Source: Octopus sinensis
Lineage: Eukaryota
DNA: 64,000 nt
Direction of reading: 5' to 3'
NCBI RefSeq assembly: GCF_006345805.1
Contig: NC_042998.1
Coordinates: 76,632,001-76,696,000 of the forward strand
Shown: positions 4,306 to 57,270 of the stretch, piece after piece
How the letters are laid out: each line of letters opens with the position of its first letter
How positions within the stretch are numbered: the stretch's first letter is position 1
Position numbers and translations under genes: made by a program
The notes under the pieces: generated by a model
The model's database searches: none
What the model was told of the DNA's origin: nothing
What the model saw: only the letters and a program-made list of their open reading frames with translations

Positions 4306-4405
4306 NNNNNNNNNNNNNNNNNNNNNNNNNNNNNNNNNNNNNNNNNNNNNNNNNNNNNNNNNNNNNNNNNNNNNNNNNNNNNNNNNNNNNNNNNNNNNNN
4401 NNNNN
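4306..4405. other. Assembly gap, 100 N
   Basis: Run of N. Confidence 1.
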
Positions 4406-12344: not shown

Positions 12345-12530
12345 ATATATGTATGTGCGGTAAGAAGCTTGTTTCTCAACTACATGGCCCCGGGTTCAAT
12401 CTCATTGCGTGGCACTTTATGCAAGTGTCTTCTACTATAGCCTCGGGTCGACAAAAGCCGTGTGATGTGTAAAGGATAAGGTAGACGGAAACTGAAAGAA
12501 ACCTGCCGTATATATGTATATATATATATA
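12345..12530 (+). mobile_element. SINE family B, 5' half (tRNA-like head), interrupted in its central (TA)n
   Basis: gtgcggtaagaagc...gggttcaatc...gcaagtgtcttctactatagcctcggg...gtagacggaaactgaaagaa. Confidence 0.8.
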
Positions 12531-13009
12531 TCTTTATATATATAAAACTGAGAATGTGTGTGTATGTGTGTCTGTCTGTGTGTTTCCCTAAAACTTGAGA
12601 ACTACACAACCAATTTCATTCAAATTTTACACATGCCTTACTTAGGGTCCATGTAGTTTCATGGGCAAAAAATGTTCAACTTCTTGCCTAGAGCGAGCCC
12701 ATAGCAATATCATATCTTCTCCACTATTTCAGTATTACGTGTTAAAAGTGAAACAAAACCGTTTCTCTATTTTATGTCAGATACTTTCACTTTAACTATA
12801 AAAATAATAATAACAATTGAATTATATGTAGTAAGTAATAATGAAAATCAAACTAAAGTATAATGTAATCGTAACACAACAAAAGTAAAAATAGCAATTG
12901 GTATAAAATTGCATCAATGATTTGAACTTGAATAAGTGGTTTCACATGAATGGGAATAAATTGAAAATAAAATTAGCGTGCAGAAATGGAATAGTCCAGA
13001 TGGATAATA

Positions 13010-13067
13010 AAAAATTAAATTAAAGAAAAGTCTATTGTCTATAAAGTATACAATGTAGAGAAAAAAG
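13010..13067 (+). pseudogene. Decayed ORF1-like paralog, 5' piece
   Basis: Translates *IKEKSIVYKVYNVEKK, aligning with WFHRRTIKYKVF of the 13227 ORF. Confidence 0.55.
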
Positions 13068-13226
13068 GTCGCGTTTTTTTGCGCTCTGTAAAATTCGGTT
13101 AAAAAAGAACAAAAAGTGAATTGTGGTTGCGGAATTGGAACGTCGGTTGGTGCGGTTTCGCGTCGCACTGGTTCTGTGCGTCGCACGTTTTCTGTTCGGG
13201 AGGCCGTTTTTCGGTCTGAGGCGACT

Positions 13227-14198
13227 ATGAGCCGCCTCTACCAAACGGATGAGATGGAAGGGAGAAATTTCTCTGAAAATTCGTCGACATCTGAGGAGGA
13301 GTTGGCGGTGAAAAAAATGGAAAGCACCTACGCAGGTATAACGAAGAAGTCAACAGAAAAAGAGATAGACCTGGCTAAGTTGACGGACTTCCAGGAGTTC
13401 ATGAAGGAGGAGGAGAACGGAGAGGTTGAGCTGTTGCCTCTAGCAGGGCGCGGAGACTGGTTCCATCGTAGAACCATTAAATATAAAGTATTTATGAATG
13501 GAGGTAGAAAAATGGAAGTGATTAACATGGAAGCAATTGAAGAGGCTTTCAAACAGACAGGAGAAGAAATTGTGTACATGACAAAAGGATTAGAATATGG
13601 AACCATAACGGTACAATTTAAAAGTGAGAAAGCAGCCAGGAATATAGCAGCCAAGGTGGTGAGTACAGAAAAGTTTTACTTGTTCCCCTCGTATTTGAAT
13701 AGAAGGACCACCAGAATTAGGGTGGAAGGAATACCTCCACACCTAGAGGGCGAATTAATAACGGCTGCGGTTATCAAAGGAAATGAAGATAAAGTGGACA
13801 TCCTCCACGCCATTATGAAATATGAAGGCGTGAGAGGTGCCACACTAGTAATAAACATACAGACGGAGGCGGAAGTTATAGAAAAGCTTACGGACAGTAT
13901 AAAAACTGGAAATATTATTATGAGAGTGTGGGTGGAGGGTAGGGCGCCCAGGTGCTACAAGTGTGGCCTGAGGGGTCACATAAGAGCCTACTGCCCTCCC
14001 CCACCAAAGGAAAAAGAAAAGGAAATTGTCGCGGAAGCCCCAAAAGAGGAAGAAACCAAAGAGAACCAAAGGGAAAAAGAAACGACAGAAGAAGAGGAGA
14101 TGCAGCAGAGTGGGAAGAAGGAAGAAAAAAGAGAAAAAGAAGAAAAAGAAAAACTGTGCGAAGCCCCAACCCACCCCAACACCACCCGCACCCTCTGA
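13227..14198 (+). CDS. LINE ORF1/gag-like nucleic-acid-binding protein (RRM-like region plus one CCHC zinc knuckle), L1/Tx1-like
   Basis: First ATG at 13227 of the 13116-14198 ORF; motifs TYAGITKK, RRTTRIRVEGIPP, RVWVEGRAPR-CYKCGLRGHIRAYC (CX2CX4HX4C, 13953-13994), then an E/K-rich tail. Confidence 0.8.
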   Translation: MSRLYQTDEMEGRNFSENSSTSEEELAVKKMESTYAGITKKSTEKEIDLAKLTDFQEFMKEEENGEVELLPLAGRGDWFHRRTIKYKVFMNGGRKMEVINMEAIEEAFKQTGEEIVYMTKGLEYGTITVQFKSEKAARNIAAKVVSTEKFYLFPSYLNRRTTRIRVEGIPPHLEGELITAAVIKGNEDKVDILHAIMKYEGVRGATLVINIQTEAEVIEKLTDSIKTGNIIMRVWVEGRAPRCYKCGLRGHIRAYCPPPPKEKEKEIVAEAPKEEETKENQREKETTEEEEMQQSGKKEEKREKEEKEKLCEAPTHPNTTRTL

Positions 14199-14583
14199 AT
14201 CCCACCCTTCCCCTGCAGACAGTGAACCCACCCTCTCCCCTCCAACAAGAAAACAAAAGAAAAATACAGACAGACAAGAGTTTGAAAACGAACCCAGGCC
14301 GAACATTTATATTGTGACTGAACAGAAAGAGGTTGCAAGGGTAATGGAGGAGTATGAATGGTATGAAATGGATGGGACCAGATATGCAGTGCTGGAAAAG
14401 AAGAATATAGATGAGTTTGTGTTGAGGTGTGAGAGGGAGAATTGGGAGGTGAAGGATACAAGAATGAGCGATGAATTCGTGGAATATATGGAGGACAGTT
14501 TCGGAGTAAGAATGGATATGGATGGTCTTCGTATTGGGAATGAACATTCAGGTGACAGTGAAAACAAAAGGACAGGTAAGTGA
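14150..14583 (+). CDS. Probable +1-frameshifted C-terminal continuation of the ORF1-like protein
   Basis: Frame of ORF 14026-14583 becomes protein-like after the A-rich run (PQPTPTPP...VMEEYEWYEMDGTRYAVLE...); removing 1 nt near 14115-14155 gives one 451-aa ORF from 13227. Confidence 0.6.
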
Positions 14584-14724
14584 TGCTGGCGGAGGGGGCC
14601 GTTAGCATCGCTTTCATATTATCATTTTTTCATTTTCATTTGCTCATAAATTTAATCATATTGTTCTATGTCCCCCATGTTTTGTTATGTCCGCCATTCT
14701 TCGTAGCCCCTGGTGGGTAATAAA

Positions 14725-15060
14725 GAAATAACATGGAGGAAAGCACCTTCGAAAAGTGTCTTGGTGCGACTATGAAAGATATCTAACCAGAGGCGGTAAA
14801 TTCGCCACAATAGAAGCAAGGTTCGAGTCAACGGAGCGTGCAAGGGAGTACTCGACTCGAACTTGCAAAGTGGAAATATTTTATTTTACCTTTATATCTG
14901 GGACGTAGGACGTCCCGGAAAAAATTTTAAATGCCCCCCCCCCCCCGAAGTAGAGGTAGGCTGGATTGTAGCCACACTTCTATACAAGAGGGAGGACAAG
15001 ATACAATTGATCGAAATTAGAAGAGACGGGCTAACAATTCCAGTCTGTTATATATTTTGA
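14725..15060 (+). pseudogene. Decayed ORF1-like paralog, 3' piece with several frameshifts
   Basis: YLTRGGKFATIEARFESTERAR vs YMTKGLEYGTITVQFKSEKAAR; PLYLGRRTSR vs PSYLNRRTTR; PPPEVEVGWIVATLLYKREDKIQLI vs PPHLEGELITAAVIKGNEDKVDIL. Confidence 0.7.
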
Positions 15061-15219
15061 GTATTGTTATCACTAGCGATATCAAGATATAACTTTGTAT
15101 TTTGTATTTTATGTGTAGATGTATATATATAGATGTACATGTAATATGTACACATATATATACACATATATACATGCACTAGCACTATGACCCGGCAACG
15201 ACGGGTCTTTAATGCTAGT

Positions 15220-15425
15220 ATGTATATATTTATGTATGTGTCTGTGCTTGTTCCCTCGCCATCGCTTGACAACCGATATTTGTATATATAGCGGTTCGGC
15301 AAAATACACTGATAGAATAAGTATTAAGCTTACAAAGAATAAGTGCTAGGGTAGATTGTTCGACTAAAGGCGGTGGCCCAGCATGGTCGCAGTCAAATGA
15401 CTGAAACAAGTAAAGGAATAAAAGA

Positions 15426-15430
<5 letters not shown>
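15220..15430 (+). mobile_element. SINE family B, 3' half (continuation of 12345-12530)
   Basis: gtgtctgtgcttgttcc...catcgcttgacaaccga...gcggttcggcaaaa...gtcaaatgactgaaacaagtaaagg. Confidence 0.8.
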
Positions 15431-15456
<26 letters not shown>

Positions 15457-15754: not shown

Positions 15755-16210
15755 GAATACTGTTGGAATGTCCCAGTGAAATCCTCAATAAAATGTAAAT
15801 ATAAGTAACTGGCATTTTATTTGGGATAGAGAAGGAAAACTACAGTTGTGGAAATCAGCTGCCCAGCGGATGTTAACCTAAAGCTAAAGATCAGCGAGAA
15901 AGAAAATACCTGTACTGGATTATTGAGGAATCTACAGCTACACTATGCAGATTTCAAGTTCAGGTTTATACCAGTAATTTTTGCGGCGCTGGGATATGTA
16001 ACACACGAAATACCAATCTTGAGGAATTAGGCTTCTCAAAACCAGGAAAAAAGCGGATTCGAATACTACAGATCCAAGCCATCACAGGAACTGTAAAAAT
16101 CTGTAAAACTTTCCAGAAGTTTATCATTTAAGTATAAATGAGCATGTCTAGACATGCAACTATATGCATAAGAATGCATACATAAAACAAAACATAGAGA
16201 TCTGCACACC
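15755..16210 (+). mobile_element. RLE-type (R4/Dong/NeSL-like) LINE, 3' end, between (CATA)n arrays
   Basis: VEISCPADVNLKLKISEKENT...LRNLQLHYADFKFRFIPVIFAALG...GTVKICKTFQKFII*: restriction-like endonuclease C-terminus. Confidence 0.8.
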
Positions 16211-16444: not shown

Positions 16445-18430
16445 ACTTTTGATAAACAAAGCTGTACTGTCAGCGGTGTAAAAAAAATCATACGAACTTT
16501 ACAATAGTATGGCTTGATTATAGGAAGACATTTGACTCTATTCCCCACTCATGATTGCTGAAGAGTCTCCATTTGGCAAAAGTGCCTACTATCTTAGTTG
16601 CTGCCATTGAGAGGCTCACAAAGACATGGAAAACAATTCTTACACTTAGAACTGAAAGCAGAATGATCGTCTCCAATGTTATAAATTTTCCAAAGGGAAT
16701 ATTCTAAGGAGATAGTCCCTCAGTAATTTTGTTCATCTTGGCATTAAATCCATTATCATTCATGCTACAAAAAGCAAATGGCTACATACCAGGGTCTGCA
16801 ACTACTAGAAATATCTATGTAACCCATGGTTTCTTTGTGGATGATCTCGAAATATATGCTAAAATATTAACACTGCCGAAAAAAAAAACCCAGCTAGAGT
16901 GAACAACATTTTCAGTTGACATAAGAATAGAATTTGGCCTAAAGAAATGTTTATATTTGATTATTGAACGGGGAAAGTCAGTCCCTGTGACTCAAAGACC
17001 TGTGTATCAATAGTCTCACTATCTCTCCTTTCCTACGCAAAGAATGCTACAAATACCTAGGCATTGATGAGACTATATTATACGAAGGTACTGTGAATAG
17101 ATATAGAATGACCTAAGGATATTAAACCAGACTTAGAAAAATATGGCAGTTAGAACGTGCCTCTTATAACAAGACAATATCCCGCAATACATTTGCTGTT
17201 TCCAGCATTTGGGATACTTGACTAGTATCTAGTAGAAATCCACAGACGTTAAAACCTGCAAGATACTGACATCAACTGGAAATCTCCACAGGAATAGTGA
17301 TATCAACAGACTCTACTTAAAAAGAGATAAAGGAGTTGGATGTTTGAGAACAGTGCTGAGAGACTTCGAATGTCGTATAGTCTTTCTCAGATAGCACTTG
17401 CTAAAAAACAGCAACAAGAATAACTTAGTACTGAAAAGTGAAGATAACAATATCCTACGCGTTAGGAGCGAACTCCTCAGGAAGCACTCTCTTCCTGATG
17501 ACCTCACATACAACCTCCAAAACAGCTGAAGAAGACCTGGATGTGAAACACTCAGCATATGAAAAACGACCATGTATGGGTATGTTTTCCGAAAACTGAA
17601 GAAGACAGCAACATTCTTTTCTACTCTAGGCACAAACTTTTGGAGAGCTGGGCCCTGTCGATTAGATCGACCCCAGTGCGCAAATGGTATTTAATTTATT
17701 GACCCCGAAAGGATGACAGGCAAAGTCGACCTCGGCGGAATATGAACTCAGAACGTAAAGAAAGACGAAATACCGCTAAGCATTTTGCCCGGCGTGCTAA
17801 CGTTTCTGCCAGCTCGCCGCCTTAGAAGACCGCAGTATTGGCATGAAGCGAAGCCTCTCTTGGAATCGTGACTGCTACATCACAGGACACTTCGATGGCT
17901 ATGCATTTCCAATCCCAAAATTGGAGATTGCTACAAAACAGCTAATAAAGAAAAGAGCCAGTCCTTGCAGTTATAAGATGCAACAGAAAATGTAGTTTAT
18001 GTGATGTTTCTGTGGAATACATCACACACGTGATTAGCAGCTCCCCCAAAGTATCATCAATATATTACCTCCTTATGCGACACGACGTTGCCGCAAAAAC
18101 AATACACAATGCCATCCGGAAAAAAAGACTGTCCTGGAATAAATATAGAAACTCGCCCTGTTATTTAATATATACACAAACATCAACACAAGGAATATTG
18201 ATGGAACATTTCCATCAAACCACCTGGCAAGTGCAAGCATAACAGCCCAGATATTATTGTTTGGGACAGACAAAAAAAGTATGTAAAGTATGGGGGTCCG
18301 CTGTCCTTGCTGATGTGAATATCTCTGAAAATCAAAGAGAAAAAGGAAAACTATGGACAACGGCTTCGAAACCTTCAGCTTCTATATTCAGATTACAAAT
18401 TTACATGTATACCAACAATAGTTAGTGTAT
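16445..18430 (+). mobile_element. Degraded RLE-type LINE (RT, zinc knuckle and RLE), same family as 55500-57270
   Basis: WLDYRKTFDSIPH (16510), GIF*GDS, FFVDDLEIYAK (16831), YKYLG, VEYITHVISSSPK...MRHDVAAK, QPDIIVWDR; many stops and frameshifts. Confidence 0.85.
17611..17823 (-). mobile_element. SINE family A, full length, inserted in the LINE
   Basis: Head aaggcggcgagctggcagaaacg, B-box gagttcatattcc, core and tail; probable 11-bp TSD agaagac[a/c]gca at 17600-17610 and 17824-17834. Confidence 0.9.
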
Positions 18431-24954: not shown

Positions 24955-25100
24955 ACGTGGCTGTGTGGTAAGAAACTTGCTTCCCAACAACATGGTACCG
25001 GGTTCAGTCCTGCTGCGCTGCACCTTAGGTATGTGTCTTTTACTATAACCTCGAGCCAACCGGAGCTTTGGTAGACGGAAACTCAAAGAAGCCTGTCGTA
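24955..25100 (+). mobile_element. SINE family B, 5' half, interrupted
   Basis: gtggctgtgtggtaagaaacttgcttccc...gggttcagtcc...gtagacggaaactcaaagaagcctgtcgta. Confidence 0.8.
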
Positions 25101-25630
25101 AATGTAAACTTCTTTTGATCAAGGTATCTTTAGCCCGAGGAGTAGCTAGCGGATTACCTCTCGTTTGGATGATTACTACTATCTATGAACCCAAACATAT
25201 GTAGCCTGGATATCAGGCTACATATCATCCGAACGTGGGTTAATCCCCTACCTACTCCTCGGGCTAAAGGTACCTTAATCAAAAGAAGTCTTCATTGTCG
25301 TCAAGGGATTCCATATTGATCTGCATGAGATTCGATTGCAAATGCGTGGAATTCATACAGATTGGGAAGAAAAGTATATTAGTGAAGAAATAAGCCACTC
25401 CACTCCCAAATATTACTGCTTCACTACTATGCTTTTTTCAGTTTCTATGTCTCCTACGCATTCCCAATTGATTCTCCTGCGTGTCAAAATGGGATTCCTT
25501 GACGACAATGTAAACCTCTTTTGATTAAGGTATTTTTGACTCGACGAATAGCTAGCATATAATCTCTCGTTTGAATAATTACCACTTTCCAGGTTCTGCC
25601 AGCTATGAAACATATGTAGCCTGGATTTTA
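25101..25630. repeat. Compound (nested) palindrome inside a ~770-bp insertion
   Basis: 25101-25210 pairs with 25212-25296; 25205-25395 pairs, more diverged, with 25405-25630. Confidence 0.65.
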
Positions 25631-25894
25631 TCTACTCCATTCCTTAATTTTAGATTTCTATTAGCATAGACAGCAGCGCCTGCTGCTAACCTTAACCTAT
25701 AAAATAATTTTTTCAGCTTATCGAACTTCGATACGGAAAAAATATACAACCTTTGACGTCAAAAACCCAACTATTGTTCCTGAATGTTGTTTTTTTTATA
25801 CGTTGTATGGACTGCTTGAAGCTTACTATCTCCCTATATCTTGATCCGTAGATCTTACCTTTACACAACACACACACACACACATGTGTGTGTG

Positions 25895-26090
25895 TGTATG
25901 TGTACCACTGATTGACAACCAGTGTCGGTGTGTTTATGTTCTTGTAACTTAGCGATTCGGCAAAGGAGTCTGATAGGATAAGTACCAAGTTTAAAATAAT
26001 GTACTGGGAGTCGATTCATTCGACCCCAAATTCTGCAAGACGGTGCCCCAGTCTGGCCGCAGTCTCACCACTGAAAGAAGTTAAAGGTAA
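25895..26090 (+). mobile_element. SINE family B, 3' half (continuation of 24955-25100)
   Basis: gattgacaaccagtgtcggtgtgttta...gtaacttagcgattcggcaaa...ggtgccccagtctggccgcagtc. Confidence 0.75.
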
Positions 26091-41758: not shown

Positions 41759-42150
41759 AAGGCAGCGAACTAGCAGAAACGTTAGCACGCTGGGCGAAAT
41801 GCTTACCGGTATTTCGTCTGCCGCTACGTTCTTAGTTCAAATTCCGCCGAGGTGAGCTTTGCCTTTCATCCTTTCGGGGTCGATAAATTAAGTACCAGTT
41901 GCGCACTGGGGTCGATGTAATCGACTTAATCCGTTTGTCTGTCCTTGTTTGTCCTCTCTGTATTTAGCCCCTTGTGGGTAGTAAAGAAATAGGTATTTCG
42001 TCTGCCGCAACGTTTTGAGTTCAAATTCCGCCGAAGTCGACCCTGCCTTTCAGGGTCGATAAATCAAGTACCTGTTGCGTACTGTGGTCAATCTAATTGA
42101 CTGGCTCCCCCTCCCCGAGAATTTCGGGCCTTGTGCCTAGAGTAGAAAAG
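41759..42150 (+). mobile_element. Nested or tandem pair of family A SINEs with two different tails
   Basis: ggtatttcgtctgccgc at 41808-41824 and 41992-42008; first unit ends tagccccttgtgggtagtaaagaaata, second ends ccttgtgcctagagtagaaaag. Confidence 0.85.
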
Positions 42151-43614: not shown

Positions 43615-44010
43615 TTACTCTTTTACTCTTTTACTTGTTTCAGTCATTTGACTGTGGCCATACTGGAGCACCACCTTTTTAGTCGAGTAAATCGACCCCA
43701 GGACTTATTCTTTGTAAGCCTAGTACTTATTCTATCGGTCTCTTTTGCCGAACCGCTAAGTTACAGGGACGTAAACACACCAACATCGGTTGTCAAGTGA
43801 TGTTGGGGGACAAACACAGACACACAAACATATACACTTACACACATATATATGATGGGCTTCTTTCAGTTTCCGTCTACCAAATCCACTCACAAGGCTT
43901 TGGTCTGCCCGAGGCTATAGGAGAAGACACTTGCCCAAGGTGCCACGCAGTGAAACTGAACCCAGAACCATGTGGTTCGTAAGCAAGCTACTTACCACAC
44001 AGCCACTCAA
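43615..44010 (-). mobile_element. SINE family B, full length and well preserved
   Basis: Head agtggctgtgtggtaagtagcttgc, B-box gggttcagtttc, tail gtcaaatgactgaaacaagtaaaaagagtaaaagag. Confidence 0.9.
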
Positions 44011-52885: not shown

Positions 52886-53529
52886 TAAACTATCTTTTGT
52901 CTTTCTAATGAAAATTGTCTTGTTTAACCAAAAAAGTAACAAATCAAAGAAAAGCGAAAAATTCAAATATCAAAAATGAACAAAATCAGAACAAAACAAA
53001 ACAACAAAACCAAACGAAAAAAAAAACGAAAAAAAAACTCCCAGATATCCTGTAATTTTTCAGATGAGATAACTGAAGACTGCAGAAATATTGTAAACCT
53101 GTCAAATACATATTATCATGAAGGAAAAAAAATAGTGTAGATTTGATATCAACGATGGTAATGTTTGGGTGATGACGACGACGATGATGATGTTGTGTCG
53201 GTGATATGTGACAATCGTTACGTTGATGGTGATATTCGAAATGATGATGATGATGATGATGGTTATGATGAGGTGTTGGTGGTGGTGACGATGATGATGT
53301 TGGATTTAGTAGTGATGGTGCTACTGTTGATGATGATAGTGATGACGATGGTGACGGTGGTGTTGGTAATGATGGTAATTGGTGGTTCTGTTAATCAATG
53401 GAGTATTGCGTTAGTAGCATTGCCGTTGATGCCAGTAATATTACAGAATATGACGATGAGAACGACAAGGGTGATGATCCCTTAGGTACTCCCACTCCCC
53501 ACATTCACGCATTCTTTCACTTATCTTTC

Positions 53530-53765
53530 ACTTATCTTTATTACCCACGAGGGGCTAAACATAGAAGGGACAAACAAGGACAGACAAACGGATTAAGCCG
53601 ATTACATCGACCCTAGTGCGTAACTGGTACTTAATTCATCGACCCCGAAAGGATGAAAGGCAAAGTCGACCTCGGCGGAATTTGAACGCAGAACATAACG
53701 GCAGACGAAATACGGCTACGCATTTCGCCCAGCGTGCTAACGGTTTTGCCAGCTCACTGCCTTTC
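53530..53765 (-). mobile_element. SINE family A, full length, tail-2 subfamily
   Basis: Minus strand ends ttgtccttgtttgtcccttctatgtttagcccctcgtgggtaataaagataag. Confidence 0.88.
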
Positions 53766-55520: not shown

Positions 55521-57270
55521 ACCGCACAGTGAGAGTGAACGTAAAACCACGTGTGAATTATTTTAGCGATAACGTCGTGCCGCATAGGGAGGTAGTACCG
55601 TGACGACATTTTTGGACAGCCGCTAATCACATGGGTAATGTCTTCCACAGAAACGTGGCATAGCCTACACATGCGGTTGCACCTTGGCATTTCAAGAGCG
55701 TCACTGTCTCTCTTGTTCACCAGTTACTTTGTTGCATTCTCCCGTCCCTGGATTGCAGCCGCATAGCCTTCAAAGTGTGGTGTGATGTAGTGGTCTTGTG
55801 TCCAAGAGCAGCTGCGCTTCGTGTCAATTCTACTGTCTTCTTCAAGCTTCCGGGAAACATACTCATGCATAGTCCTTTTTTTGTATGGGTGAGTGCTTTC
55901 CATCCAGGTCTTCTCTGAGCTAAGAGAGCCCAGCTGTTTTGGGATGTTATAGGAGGTCATCAGTTTGAGAGTGCTTCTTGAGGAGTTCACTGCCAACTCG
56001 TACAATGTTGCTCACTTCACTTTTCAGGACTTCATAAATATATTTATCTTTGCTGCTGTTGTTTAGCAGATGCTGCCTGGGTGATACCATACGATATCCG
56101 AAGGACGTCTGCACTGATCTCAGGCCTCTACCACCTTCATTTCTTCTTAGGTAGAGGCTGTCAACACTACTATTTCTGCGGAAGTTCCCAGTTGTCAGGA
56201 CTTTTCGGGTTTGGATATCTATAGTGTGGATTTCCTCTATAGATCAATCAAGTATCCCAAATGTTGGGATCAGCACTGGTACTGGAAATGCATTGTTGGA
56301 TATTGTTTTGTTGTGAGATGAGAGTTCCGACTGCCATATTTTCCTAAGTCTGGTGTAATGTTCTCGGGTAACTCTGTCTTTATTCATAGTGTCTTCATAT
56401 GATACATTTTCGTCTATGCCTAGGAACTTGTAACATTCTTTGTGTGGAATGGGGGAGATAGGGAGGCCGTTGATGCACAGGTTTGGGGTACTGACTTTCC
56501 TCGTTTTATAACCAAATATGAACATTTCTTTTGGCCAAGTTCCATGCCTATATTAGCTGAAAATGTTATTAATTCCAGTTGTTTTTTGACATTGCTAACA
56601 CTTTTAGCATAAATCTTGAGATCGTCTACAAAGAAATCATGAGTTACATCGATATTTCTGGCAGTTGAAGATCCTAGCAAGTAACCATTTGTTTTCTGCA
56701 GAAGGAACGATAATGGATTCTGTGCCAAAATGAAAAGAAGTACAAAAACACTATCTCCGTGGAATATTCTCATTGTAATGACCATACTATTAGAAACAAT
56801 TATTCTGTTCTCAATTGTAGCTGTCCATGTCCTAGTGAGTCTCTCTATAGCAGCAATTAAGGTAGTGGGCACCTTTTCCAGATGTAGGTATTTTAACAGC
56901 CGTGAATGAGGGATATAGTCGAATGCCTTCTTATAGTCAAGCCATAGTGTCACAAGGATTCTGCGTTGCTTTCTTACTCCAGACAATACTGCTTTGTTTA
57001 TTAAAAGTTGTTCGGCACATTCTCACACTCCCTTTTTTCCGCCAGCCTGTTCATCAGTCACAATGTTATTCGACTCACAATGGTCCTGGAGGAATTAGTT
57101 GAGGCAACTTATGCACAGTTTGTACATAATGTTTAGGCAAGCAATGGACCTGTAGTTTCCTGCCTTCATTTTTGGCAACGAGATTTGTTCTTCTTGTAGC
57201 AAGCCAATGTGGTACATCAGTCTGACCTCCCATAGTCCTTTTGAAAATACACATCGATTGCCTTCTGGTT
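55500..57270 (-). mobile_element. Degraded RLE-type LINE (RT to zinc knuckle)
   Basis: WLDYKKAFDYIPH, IFHGDS, FFVDDLKIYAK, YKFLG, CRLCHVSVEDITHVISGCPKMSSRYYLPMRHDVIAK; 5' side abuts (CATA)n. Confidence 0.88.

What the first reader, a model, noticed from the sequence alone, without database searches (positions are those of the whole stretch)
12345..15430. Four-level nest: SINE > Helitron > decayed ORF1 gene > ORF1-only retroelement
Seen in the sequence: a family B SINE head (12345-12530) and tail (15220-15430) are separated by exactly one Helitron-bounded unit (A|TC at 12531; hairpin + CTAG|T at 15218). Inside lies LINE-ORF1-like coding DNA and no Rep/helicase. Established: non-autonomous Helitrons capture gene fragments and insert between A and T without a TSD. 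Inference: a rolling-circle DNA transposon is carrying retroelement gag-like cargo, a cross-class composite that could spread an RNA-binding ORF1 protein by rolling-circle transposition.
Basis: partly seen in the sequence, partly recalled or inferred. Interest (0 to 1): 0.85.

Follow-up and report, generated by a model that had tools for sequence, protein, structure and literature searches.

The report
Half-LINE nested in split octopus SINE
A short repeat (SINE) in what is almost certainly an octopus genome is split by a 2.7-kb stack of mobile DNA: an old LINE fragment holding a younger 'half-LINE' that encodes only the RNA-binding ORF1 protein. The outer shell's ends look like a Helitron's, but one copy cannot prove that, and the nest as a whole is an ordinary kind.

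Summary
Joining 12345-12530 to 15219-15440 rebuilds a complete SINE matching the intact copy at 43619-44000 (-). The insert (12531-15218) starts A|TC. It ends with a 19-nt GC-rich palindrome, 11 nt, then CTAG|T. It holds no Rep/helicase. Three of the four nest levels are well supported. A decayed ORF1 fragment (A: ~12910-13066 plus 14730-15030) aligns colinearly to the family profile across a 1.65-kb insert (B: 13068-14722). B is an internally deleted LINE. It has a 5'UTR and a tandem-RRM-like plus CCHC ORF1 with one frameshift in an A-run. A TGATG stop/start overlap leads into about 10 ORF2 codons. Its 3' tail is the same as the tail of a second SINE family in the window. B therefore resembles mammalian HAL1 and moved by reverse transcription in trans. 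The Helitron label meets every canonical terminal criterion, and the 3' signal is rare in the window. It is still a single copy in a (TA)n target, so 5' TC, the A|T site and 'no TSD' are weak. The terminal stem-loop could instead be LINE A's own 3' end. I put Helitron at about 0.45. 'Helitron spreading ORF1' is unsupported. This is a new member of known kinds, of low to moderate interest.

The parts
12354..12530 (+). SINE ('family B') head, running up to its internal (TA/TG)n microsatellite
   Evidence: Aligns to the intact copy 43996-43858 (-) at 80% identity
12531..15218 (+). Outer inserted unit (2688 bp). It has Helitron-type termini, and its body is LINE A plus LINE B
   Evidence: Absent from the intact SINE copy; the joined flanks rebuild the SINE. 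No other copy in the window
12531..12605 (+). Left terminus: TC start, a TA run, then a TG-rich stretch that resembles the SINE's own middle body (unexplained)
   Evidence: Sequence. The local alignment to the SINE body beats 300/300 shuffles only when the TG microsatellite is included
12910..13066 (+). Decayed LINE A, ORF1 N-terminal part. It has stops and a frameshift and ends with ...KSIVYKVYNVEKK at 13028-13066
   Evidence: Maps to family profile positions 56-76. Adding it to the downstream piece raises the score from 98 to 109 bits, with contiguous profile positions
13068..14722 (+). LINE B: an internally deleted, ORF1-only 'half-LINE'. GC is 44%, against 28% for the A-side flank 12531-13067
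   Evidence: Interrupts A between profile positions 76 and 80. GC values
13227..14198 (+). B ORF1, first frame (323 codons, no stop): N-terminal region, two RRM-like domains, CCHC knuckle (13953-13994), K/E-rich linker
   Evidence: 219 homologues, all named ones from octopods. Foldseek top hits are tandem-RRM proteins at 2e-5. The family profile matches the zinc knuckles of retroviral nucleocapsid (gag-derived) proteins in the PDB at 4e-7
14120..14182 (+). Frameshift zone in A-runs. The reading frame moves +1 relative to the closest relative
   Evidence: O. sinensis XP_036368115 (P0001) aligns at aa 1-~170 in one frame and aa 179-241 in the next, E = 4e-7. This could be a real mutation or a homopolymer assembly error
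14182..14583 (+). B ORF1, second frame (133 codons from 14182, no stop), ending at TGA 14581-14583
14574..14585 (+). ORF1/ORF2 junction AGGTAAGTGATG: stop TGA overlaps ATG (TGATG)
   Evidence: The same AGGTAAGTnATG sits at the same place in Logan contig L001. There it opens an ORF reading MSICLGCLNVKGLRSNWKQGRFLN, which is AP-endonuclease-like by motif only. It is the only match in the window
14583..14612 (+). ORF2 stub (about 10 codons, MLAEGAVSIA...); the rest of ORF2 is deleted
   Evidence: no Pfam hit
14695..14722 (+). B 3' tail TAGCCCCTGGTGGGTAATAAAGAAATA, shared with the 3' end of a second SINE family
   Evidence: BLASTN 14704-14730 vs 41965-41991 (92.6%, E = 1e-5) and vs 53557-53535 (95.7%). 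These hits are the 3' ends of SINE copies 41773-41987 (+) and 53750-53525 (-)
14730..15030 (+). Decayed LINE A, ORF1 middle part (profile positions 80-179) in three successive frames. It stops before the CCHC knuckle
   Evidence: hmmsearch of raw frames gives 5e-8 and 1e-3; frame-corrected gives E = 1e-31
15031..15188 (+). Non-coding, TA/CA-microsatellite-rich stretch between the end of A homology and the terminal hairpin
   Evidence: No family homology; no other copy in the window
15189..15207 (+). 19-nt GC-rich palindrome. It is extended by CTAGCA (15179-84) pairing with TGCTAG (15213-18)
15215..15218 (+). Terminal CTAG (CTRR), 11 nt after the palindrome and followed by host T
15219..15425 (+). 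SINE ('family B') tail
   Evidence: Aligns to 43840-43619 (-) at 78% identity
43619..44000 (-). Intact reference copy of the same SINE, serving as the paralogous 'empty site'

Best explanation
Shown: a SINE copy was broken in its internal (TA/TG)n microsatellite by a 2.69-kb block. The body of that block is the 5' part of an old, heavily decayed LINE (A). It holds about 180 codons of a tandem-RRM/CCHC ORF1 in sense orientation. A is itself interrupted at about codon 95 by a much younger element, B (13068-14722).

B is a 'half-LINE'. It keeps a 5'UTR and a full ORF1 that is open except for one frameshift in an A-run. It also keeps the TGATG stop/start junction into ORF2 and about 10 ORF2 codons. 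It then jumps directly to about 110 nt of 3'UTR, and the last ~28 nt of that are the same tail carried by a second SINE family in the window.

[quoted passage not shown] B reached its place inside A in this way, not by DNA-level 'capture'.

Inferred for the outer shell, about 45% likely: a non-autonomous canonical Helitron. It would have picked up a fragment of LINE A and inserted between A and T of the SINE's TA run by rolling-circle transposition. The 19-nt palindrome and CTAG would be its termination signal. When B entered, before or after that move, cannot be told from one copy.
For: Split SINE and exact rebuild.

A is split by B: the family profile aligns colinearly across the junction (positions 57-179, E = 6e-35), and adding the upstream piece gains 11 bits.

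The family is a LINE ORF1. The architecture is tandem RRM-like (Foldseek 2e-5 to IMP3 RRM12, then Raver1, UP1 and NONO) plus a CCHC knuckle. That is Type I ORF1p as defined in PMC5203782. In relative L001 the same gene is followed, after the same AGGTAAGTnATG junction, by an ORF starting ...CLNVKGL....

B's tail equals the SINE-2 tail.

B is young: 0 stops in 323 + 133 codons and 44% GC, against 28% GC in the flank that carries decayed A (12531-13067), and A has several stops and frameshifts.

Helitron hallmarks as listed in PMC4067079 are all present: 5' TC, 3' CTRR, a 16-20-nt palindrome about 11 bp from the end, an A|T site and no TSD. The 3' signal occurs at only 3 ends in 128 kb. There is no Rep/helicase inside. 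Helitrons are annotated as recently active in O. vulgaris (PMC13282606).
Against: The termini are single-copy in every sequence I could search. PMC11417382 warns that TC/CTRR-based Helitron calls have many false positives, and the one mention of mollusc hosts places them in an HLE2 subgroup (b). The target is a TA microsatellite, so 5' TC, the A|T site and absence of a TSD carry little weight. An 11-mer, TATGTATATAT, flanks both sides but occurs 42 times in the window. CTAG is part of an extended palindrome that has CTAG on both sides. A lies in sense orientation and its predicted 5' end falls near the left boundary, which would also fit A being the inserted element. The AP-endonuclease reading of the 24-aa L001 peptide rests on a motif only, with no Pfam or PDB hit. 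B has no clear TSD and no poly(A).
Confidence: 0.45

Rival explanations
1. The outer unit is not a Helitron. LINE A is itself an internally deleted LINE derivative: a 5' region plus half of ORF1, joined to about 190 nt of its own 3'UTR. That 3'UTR ends in a stem-loop followed by a TATG/TA microsatellite tail. A inserted into the SINE's matching microsatellite by target-primed reverse transcription, and B later retrotransposed into it. The CTAG and TC are coincidental.
For: A is in sense orientation. Extrapolating from B (159-nt 5'UTR, about 250 nt to the YKV motif), A's 5' end falls near the left boundary. B shows that head-plus-tail deletion derivatives exist in this genome. The terminal structure is a 40-nt imperfect hairpin ending exactly at the boundary and followed by (TATG)-like repeats. 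From established knowledge, this is the layout of stringent-type LINE/SINE 3' ends. LINEs make up about 13% of the O. vulgaris genome, and far more recent LINE insertions than Helitron insertions are annotated there (PMC13282606).
Against: It needs CTRR, the 11-nt spacing and 5' TC to be chance, roughly 1/64 times 1/16 before allowing for boundary slack. No SINE or LINE in the window shares this 3' end. No TSD can be demonstrated.
Confidence: 0.3
2. The block is not one unit. The SINE's internal microsatellite is a fragile or favoured site, and it accumulated several independent insertions, deletions or double-strand-break 'filler' DNA. The hairpin-CTAG is then the end of a small separate fragment or a chance motif.
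For: A second copy of the same SINE (24960-26090) is also interrupted at the same microsatellite by about 770 bp of unrelated, MITE-like DNA. The left end of the insert carries a stretch resembling the SINE's own body. A is truncated at about 15030, and unrelated microsatellite-rich DNA follows it.
Against: The hairpin-CTRR-T signal is rare (3 ends in 128 kb) yet sits exactly at the boundary. The joined flanks rebuild the SINE without loss.
Confidence: 0.2
3. One reading: a Helitron carried B as cargo when it transposed, and so spreads a working ORF1 gene by rolling-circle transposition. This is a subset of the Helitron scenario.
For: Helitron-type ends. The B ORF is nearly intact. Non-LTR retrotransposon fragments have been reported inside DINE-1-like elements, which that paper assigns to the Helentrons (PMC4067079).
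Against: B has its own retrotransposition signals. B is far younger than A, which surrounds it, so a later insertion is the simpler order of events. B has a frameshift. No second copy is available to show co-mobilisation.
Confidence: 0.08

Closest known systems
HAL1 ('half-L1'), ORF1-only non-autonomous LINE-1 derivatives of mammals (PMC5753468, citing Smit 1999 and Bao & Jurka 2010)
   Same: B keeps the 5' region, ORF1 and the 3' end of a LINE and has lost ORF2. It must be mobilised in trans.
   Different: The host is an octopod. ORF1 is Type I (RRM + CCHC), not the coiled-coil/Transposase_22 type. The LINE clade is undetermined. Family copy number was not measured.
Type I ORF1p (RRM(s) + CCHC knuckle) of plant L1, Tx1-group and Jockey-superfamily LINEs (Khazina & Weichenrieder 2009, as summarised in PMC5203782; PMC4120745)
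   Same: Two RRM-like domains are followed by one CCHC knuckle, and the gene lies immediately upstream of ORF2 with a stop/start overlap.
   Different: No Pfam RRM or ORF1 model detects it. It has a long K/E- and P/T-rich linker plus about 130 further codons after the knuckle. Some relatives share a C-terminal domain, but the window copy does not match it significantly.
Canonical non-autonomous Helitrons (HLE1) that carry captured host or TE fragments (definition in PMC4067079 and PMC11417382)
   Same: 5' TC, a 19-nt palindrome 11 nt before a 3' CTAG, an A|T site, no TSD, no Rep/helicase, and an internal segment of foreign origin.
   Different: It is a single copy with no known autonomous partner. 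The terminal CTAG is part of a longer palindrome. The target is a microsatellite, so the signals are weak.
LINE-SINE pairs that share a 3' tail, such as eel UnaL2/UnaSINE1 (established knowledge; SINE composition reviewed in PMC5786205)
   Same: B's last ~28 nt equal the 3' end of a second SINE family in the same window.
   Different: Only about 28 nt are clearly shared. Only 2 of 14 SINE-2 copies in the window retain that tail. The full-length partner LINE was not seen.

Membership tests
Canonical Helitron (HLE1), non-autonomous | 5' end starts with TC | tested here: met
   12531-12532 is TC. The evidence is weak because it interrupts a TA run and the boundary could slide by several bases.
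Canonical Helitron (HLE1), non-autonomous | 3' end is CTRR, with a 16-20-nt palindrome about 11 bp upstream | tested here: met
   The 19-nt palindrome is at 15189-15207, followed by 11 nt ending in CTAG at 15215-18. The motif occurs at 3 ends in 128 kb, against 0.8 in shuffles.
Canonical Helitron (HLE1), non-autonomous | Insertion between A and T without a target-site duplication | tested here: inconclusive
   A|...|T is present, and the joined flanks rebuild the SINE. In a TA/TATG microsatellite, however, a short TSD can be neither seen nor excluded.
Canonical Helitron (HLE1), non-autonomous | Several genomic copies share both termini, and an autonomous Rep/helicase partner has the same ends | not testable with these tools
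   No octopod genome is searchable here. There are no copies in the window or in the prokaryote or viral collections.
Helentron / Helitron2 (HLE2) | 12-16-nt (sub)terminal inverted repeats and insertion between T and T | tested here: not met
   The only inverted matches between the ends are TA-microsatellite matches. The site is A|T.
LINE ORF1, Type I (RRM + CCHC) | At least one RRM fold | tested here: met
   The AF2 model (pLDDT 60-83 over aa 80-240) shows two RRM-like alpha/beta units, the first beta-alpha-beta-beta-alpha-beta. The 16 Foldseek hits at E <= 1e-3, and most of the top 50, are tandem-RRM proteins, with the best at 2e-5. Model confidence is moderate and the alignment had only 2 sequences.
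LINE ORF1, Type I (RRM + CCHC) | CCHC zinc knuckle | tested here: met
   CYKCGLRGHIRAYC lies at 13953-13994. Pfam zf-CCHC scores only E = 0.061 for this copy, but 2e-6 to 3e-4 in four of the ten long relatives scanned. The family profile matches the zinc knuckles of retroviral nucleocapsid (gag-derived) proteins in the PDB at 4e-7.
LINE ORF1, Type I (RRM + CCHC) | Encoded directly upstream of an endonuclease/RT ORF2 in full-length elements | tested here: inconclusive
   In L001 the gene is followed by an ORF starting MSICLGCLNVKGLRSNWKQGRFLN. This fits the N-terminal AP-endonuclease motif only from knowledge, and the contig ends after 24 aa. There is no Pfam or PDB hit.
HAL1-like ORF1-only LINE derivative | ORF1 retained, ORF2 deleted, authentic LINE 3' end retained | tested here: met
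   ORF1 runs 13227-14583, the ORF2 stub is about 10 codons, and the 3' tail is shared with the SINE-2 3' ends.
HAL1-like ORF1-only LINE derivative | Amplified as a family of its own, with TSDs, and derived from an identifiable partner LINE | not testable with these tools
   There is only one copy in the window. Exact-protein look-ups found nothing. The TSD is unclear.
SINE ('family B') | Short, multi-copy, with head and tail colinear with other copies | tested here: met
   There is one intact copy and at least three further copies in the window. The origin of the head was not established: ARAGORN finds no tRNA and Rfam gives no relevant match.

The most novel reading that the evidence does not exclude
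The outer unit is a true canonical Helitron that was mobile with B aboard. In octopods, rolling-circle transposition would then disperse a potentially coding, retrotransposition-competent half-LINE. Each Helitron landing would seed a new source locus for ORF1 protein and for further reverse-transcribed copies. This would be a functional link between two transposon classes, not a passive nest.
Probability: 0.07. Interest if true: 0.55.

Novelty: new member of a known kind. Interest (0 to 1): 0.25.

Why it matters
The locus gives a clean, dated stack of insertion events in an octopod genome, in the order SINE, then outer unit with old LINE A, then young half-LINE B.

It also documents an ORF1-only LINE derivative outside mammals. 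Its ORF1 belongs to a family that octopod genome annotations list as many separate 'uncharacterized' genes, so part of that apparent gene family is probably transposon ORF1.

In addition, it links one SINE family to its likely LINE partner through a shared 3' tail.

If the Helitron reading were confirmed genome-wide, it would add a canonical (HLE1-type) Helitron family with retroelement cargo to cephalopods. Fragments of non-LTR elements inside rolling-circle elements are already known, so this would refine annotation rather than change concepts.

Tried and rejected
- **Word-indexed protein searches.** All three failed. Searches returned nothing. One search, run with a 32-sequence alignment, returned one protein. 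Only the exhaustive HMMER search found the family.
- **Exact-protein look-ups.** The two window ORFs were tried with three start choices and are not on record. Neither other copies nor the orthologous locus could be fetched.
- **Metagenome scan.** A scan with the long subfamily (A4) returned only CCHC-knuckle matches.
- **Scans for the 3' terminus.** Exact scans of prokaryote genomes and viral contigs gave 0 hits, as expected.
- **Single-sequence AF2.** The model was too poor to use, pLDDT 36.
- **C-terminal domain.** A visually suggestive similarity between the window's second-frame region and relatives was rejected. Neither phmmer nor a profile built from P0009/P0011/P0136 gives any hit. The frameshift therefore rests only on P0001 and on the length of the open frame.
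- **ORF2 stub.** Pfam and PDB searches of the 24-aa L001 ORF2 start and of the window ORF2 stub returned nothing.
- **SINE-like stretch in the left terminus.** Treating it as a long TSD or second SINE copy is inconclusive. It is significant only when the TG microsatellite is included.
- **TSD from the flanking 11-mer TATGTATATAT.** Rejected, because the word occurs 42 times in the window.
- **Rfam matches in the region.** All are below gathering thresholds and lie on microsatellites.
- **Helentron-type terminal inverted repeats.** Only TA-repeat matches were found.
- **GTAAGT...TAG intron (14576-14706).** I considered and dropped it. The GTAAGT is better explained as part of the conserved ORF1/ORF2 junction.
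Full report
**Source and context.** The window is AT-rich (GC about 30-40%), full of microsatellites and interspersed repeats, and has no tRNA genes. Every named relative of the ORF in the finding comes from an octopod: Octopus sinensis, O. vulgaris, O. bimaculoides and Argonauta hians. The best is XP_036368115 at 57% identity. The window is therefore almost certainly octopod nuclear DNA.

**Observation check: the split SINE.** The SINE head (12359-12503) and tail (15219-15425) each hit one uninterrupted copy on the minus strand at 43996-43619, at 78-80% identity. A global alignment of the joined flanks (12345-12530 + 15219-15440) against that copy is colinear from first to last base. The break lies in the SINE's internal TA/TG microsatellite. 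The 2688-bp insert has no second copy in the window.

**Observation check: the termini.** The insert begins A|TC at 12530/12531. It ends with a 19-nt palindrome (15189-15207), then 11 nt, the last four being CTAG, then T. The end folds far better than shuffles, z = -5.6. A scan for 'GC-rich 6-bp stem, short loop, 3-15 nt, CTRR, T' finds only three ends in 128 kb. Two of them are this hairpin read on either strand, and shuffles give a mean of 0.8. The scan was designed after seeing the case, so it is a guide rather than a p-value. No ORF in the insert other than the ORF1 family hits any Pfam model, so no Rep/helicase is present.

**What the coding DNA is.** The ORF at 13227-14195 (323 aa) has only a sub-threshold zf-CCHC Pfam hit and no word-index hits. 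The exhaustive HMMER search finds 219 relatives, 31 of them at E <= 1e-10. An AlphaFold model built with one relative has pLDDT 60-83 over residues 80-240 and shows two RRM-like alpha/beta units, the first with beta-alpha-beta-beta-alpha-beta order. The 16 Foldseek hits at E <= 1e-3, and most of the top 50, are tandem-RRM proteins: IMP3 RRM12 at 2e-5, then Raver1, UP1 and NONO. The family profile matches the zinc knuckles of retroviral nucleocapsid (gag-derived) proteins in the PDB at 4e-7. RRM(s) plus CCHC is the definition of Type I LINE ORF1p (PMC5203782).

Context supports a LINE origin. In Logan contig L001 a relative of this gene is followed, after the sequence AGGTAAGTcATG, by an ORF beginning MSICLGCLNVKGLRSNWKQGRFLN. 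From established knowledge this fits the N-terminal motif of AP-type LINE endonucleases. No tool could confirm it on 24 residues. The window has the same junction, AGGTAAGTGATG (14574-14585). Here the ORF1 stop TGA overlaps an ATG, but only about 10 plausible ORF2 codons follow.

**The inner element B.** Relative to P0001, the reading frame shifts by +1 within the A-runs at 14120-14182. The second frame stays open for 133 more codons up to the TGATG. ORF1 is therefore complete apart from one frameshift, which may be an assembly error.

After the ORF2 stub comes about 110 nt of non-coding DNA ending TAGCCCCTGGTGGGTAATAAAGAAATA (14695-14722). This stretch matches the 3' ends of two copies of a second SINE family, at 41773-41987 (+) and 53750-53525 (-). 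Identity is 24-26 of 27-29 positions, and the BLASTN E-value within the window is 1e-5. A shared 3' tail is the classical mark of a LINE and the SINE it mobilises.

B (13068-14722) is thus an internally deleted LINE that keeps its head, ORF1 and tail. It is a counterpart of mammalian HAL1 (PMC5753468). I found no convincing TSD and no poly(A).

**The decayed paralogue A.** The family profile hits 14777-14881 (5e-8), 14874-14918 and 14941-15027 in three successive frames. I took each piece in its own frame. The downstream part then aligns to profile positions 80-179 at E = 1e-31, and the upstream piece ending at 13066 aligns to positions 56-76. The joined sequence aligns contiguously over positions 57-179, with the score rising from 98 to 109 bits.

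A stops at about 15030, before the knuckle. It carries several stops and frameshifts, and the flank that holds its upstream part (12531-13067) is 28% GC against 44% for B. A is much older than B.

**The outer shell.** Every canonical Helitron terminal criterion listed in PMC4067079 is met. Helitrons are annotated as recently active in O. vulgaris (PMC13282606). Several points cut the other way:

- The termini are single-copy in everything I could search.
- TC/CTRR-based calls are known to give many false positives, and the one mention of mollusc hosts in PMC11417382 places them in an HLE2 subgroup.
- The TA-microsatellite target empties 5' TC, the A|T site and 'no TSD' of most of their weight. 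The flanking 11-mer that could be a TSD occurs 42 times in the window.
- The terminal CTAG pairs with an upstream CTAGCA in a 40-nt hairpin that has CTAG on both sides.
- A stem-loop directly followed by a microsatellite is also how stringent LINE 3' ends look.
- A lies in sense orientation, and its extrapolated 5' end falls near the left boundary.

I therefore rate the outer shell as follows: Helitron about 0.45; A being a head-plus-tail LINE derivative with its own 3' stem-loop about 0.3; a composite of several events at a fragile microsatellite about 0.2. The last option gains some support from a second copy of the same SINE (24960-26090), which is interrupted at the same spot by unrelated DNA.

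**The 'cross-class cargo' inference.** Even if the shell is a Helitron, B does not need it. B carries its own retrotransposition signals and is far younger than the A sequence around it. The simplest history is that B retrotransposed into A. Whether this happened before or after the outer unit landed here is undecidable from one copy. Non-LTR retrotransposon fragments have already been reported inside DINE-1-like elements, which PMC4067079 assigns to the Helentrons, so the composite would not be a new principle.

**Verdict.** The nest is real. Its two inner levels are now well characterised: an old LINE ORF1 fragment split by a HAL1-like half-LINE that shares its tail with a SINE family. The Helitron level remains a plausible but untested label. 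The idea of ORF1 being spread by rolling-circle transposition has no support. This is a new member of known kinds, with interest about 0.25.

Noticed in passing
window 24960-26090: A second copy of the same SINE is interrupted at the same internal microsatellite by about 770 bp of unrelated DNA. That DNA contains palindromic, MITE-like units (about 25103-25310, with a related unit at about 25505-25620). The SINE's centre therefore looks like a recurrent insertion or breakage site.
   Followed up: partly
window 25661-25687 (- strand): This is the only other hit of the 'GC hairpin + CTRR + T' scan in the window (CAGCAGgcgCTGCTG...CTAA|T). It lies inside that second SINE's insert but not at its boundary.
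   Followed up: no
window 14574-14585 and L001 1846-1859: The ORF1/ORF2 junction reads AGGTAAGTnATG in both the window element and a relative that is only about 21% identical. AGGTAAGT is also a perfect 5' splice-site (U1) consensus. With only two sequences, conservation is not established.
   Followed up: partly
window 41773-41987, 41993-42097, 53525-53750 and 11 further partial copies: A second SINE family has at least 14 copies in 64 kb. Most stop at about position 155 of the 226-nt query, and only two keep the 3' tail shared with element B. At 41993 a partial copy follows directly after a complete one.
   Followed up: partly
window 12557-12602: The left end of the insert contains a TG-rich stretch plus ACTTGAGAAC that resembles the SINE's own middle body (GTGTCTGTG...CCC...ACTTGACAAC). 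Its significance depends on the microsatellite part, and its origin is unexplained. It could be captured SINE DNA, a 5' transduction, or a shared LINE/SINE body.
   Followed up: partly
window 16555-16902 (+) and 56420-56986 (-); also 15848-16030 (+): These are fragments of one reverse-transcriptase-bearing element family (…FFVDDL.IYAK…). One lies just downstream of the split SINE, next to an ORF fragment (EISCPADVNLKLKISEKEN…) that may belong to the same element. They were not classified and are not related to the ORF1 family.
   Followed up: no
P0040, P0093, P0133 (octopod database proteins): Some annotated octopod proteins fuse this ORF1 module to unrelated parts, such as C2H2 zinc-finger arrays or cysteine-rich LDL-receptor-like repeats. 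One member is named 'EPM2A-interacting 1-like'. These are probably gene-model chimeras with transposon ORF1.
   Followed up: no
window 4306-4405: A run of 100 N, which is an assembly gap.
   Followed up: no
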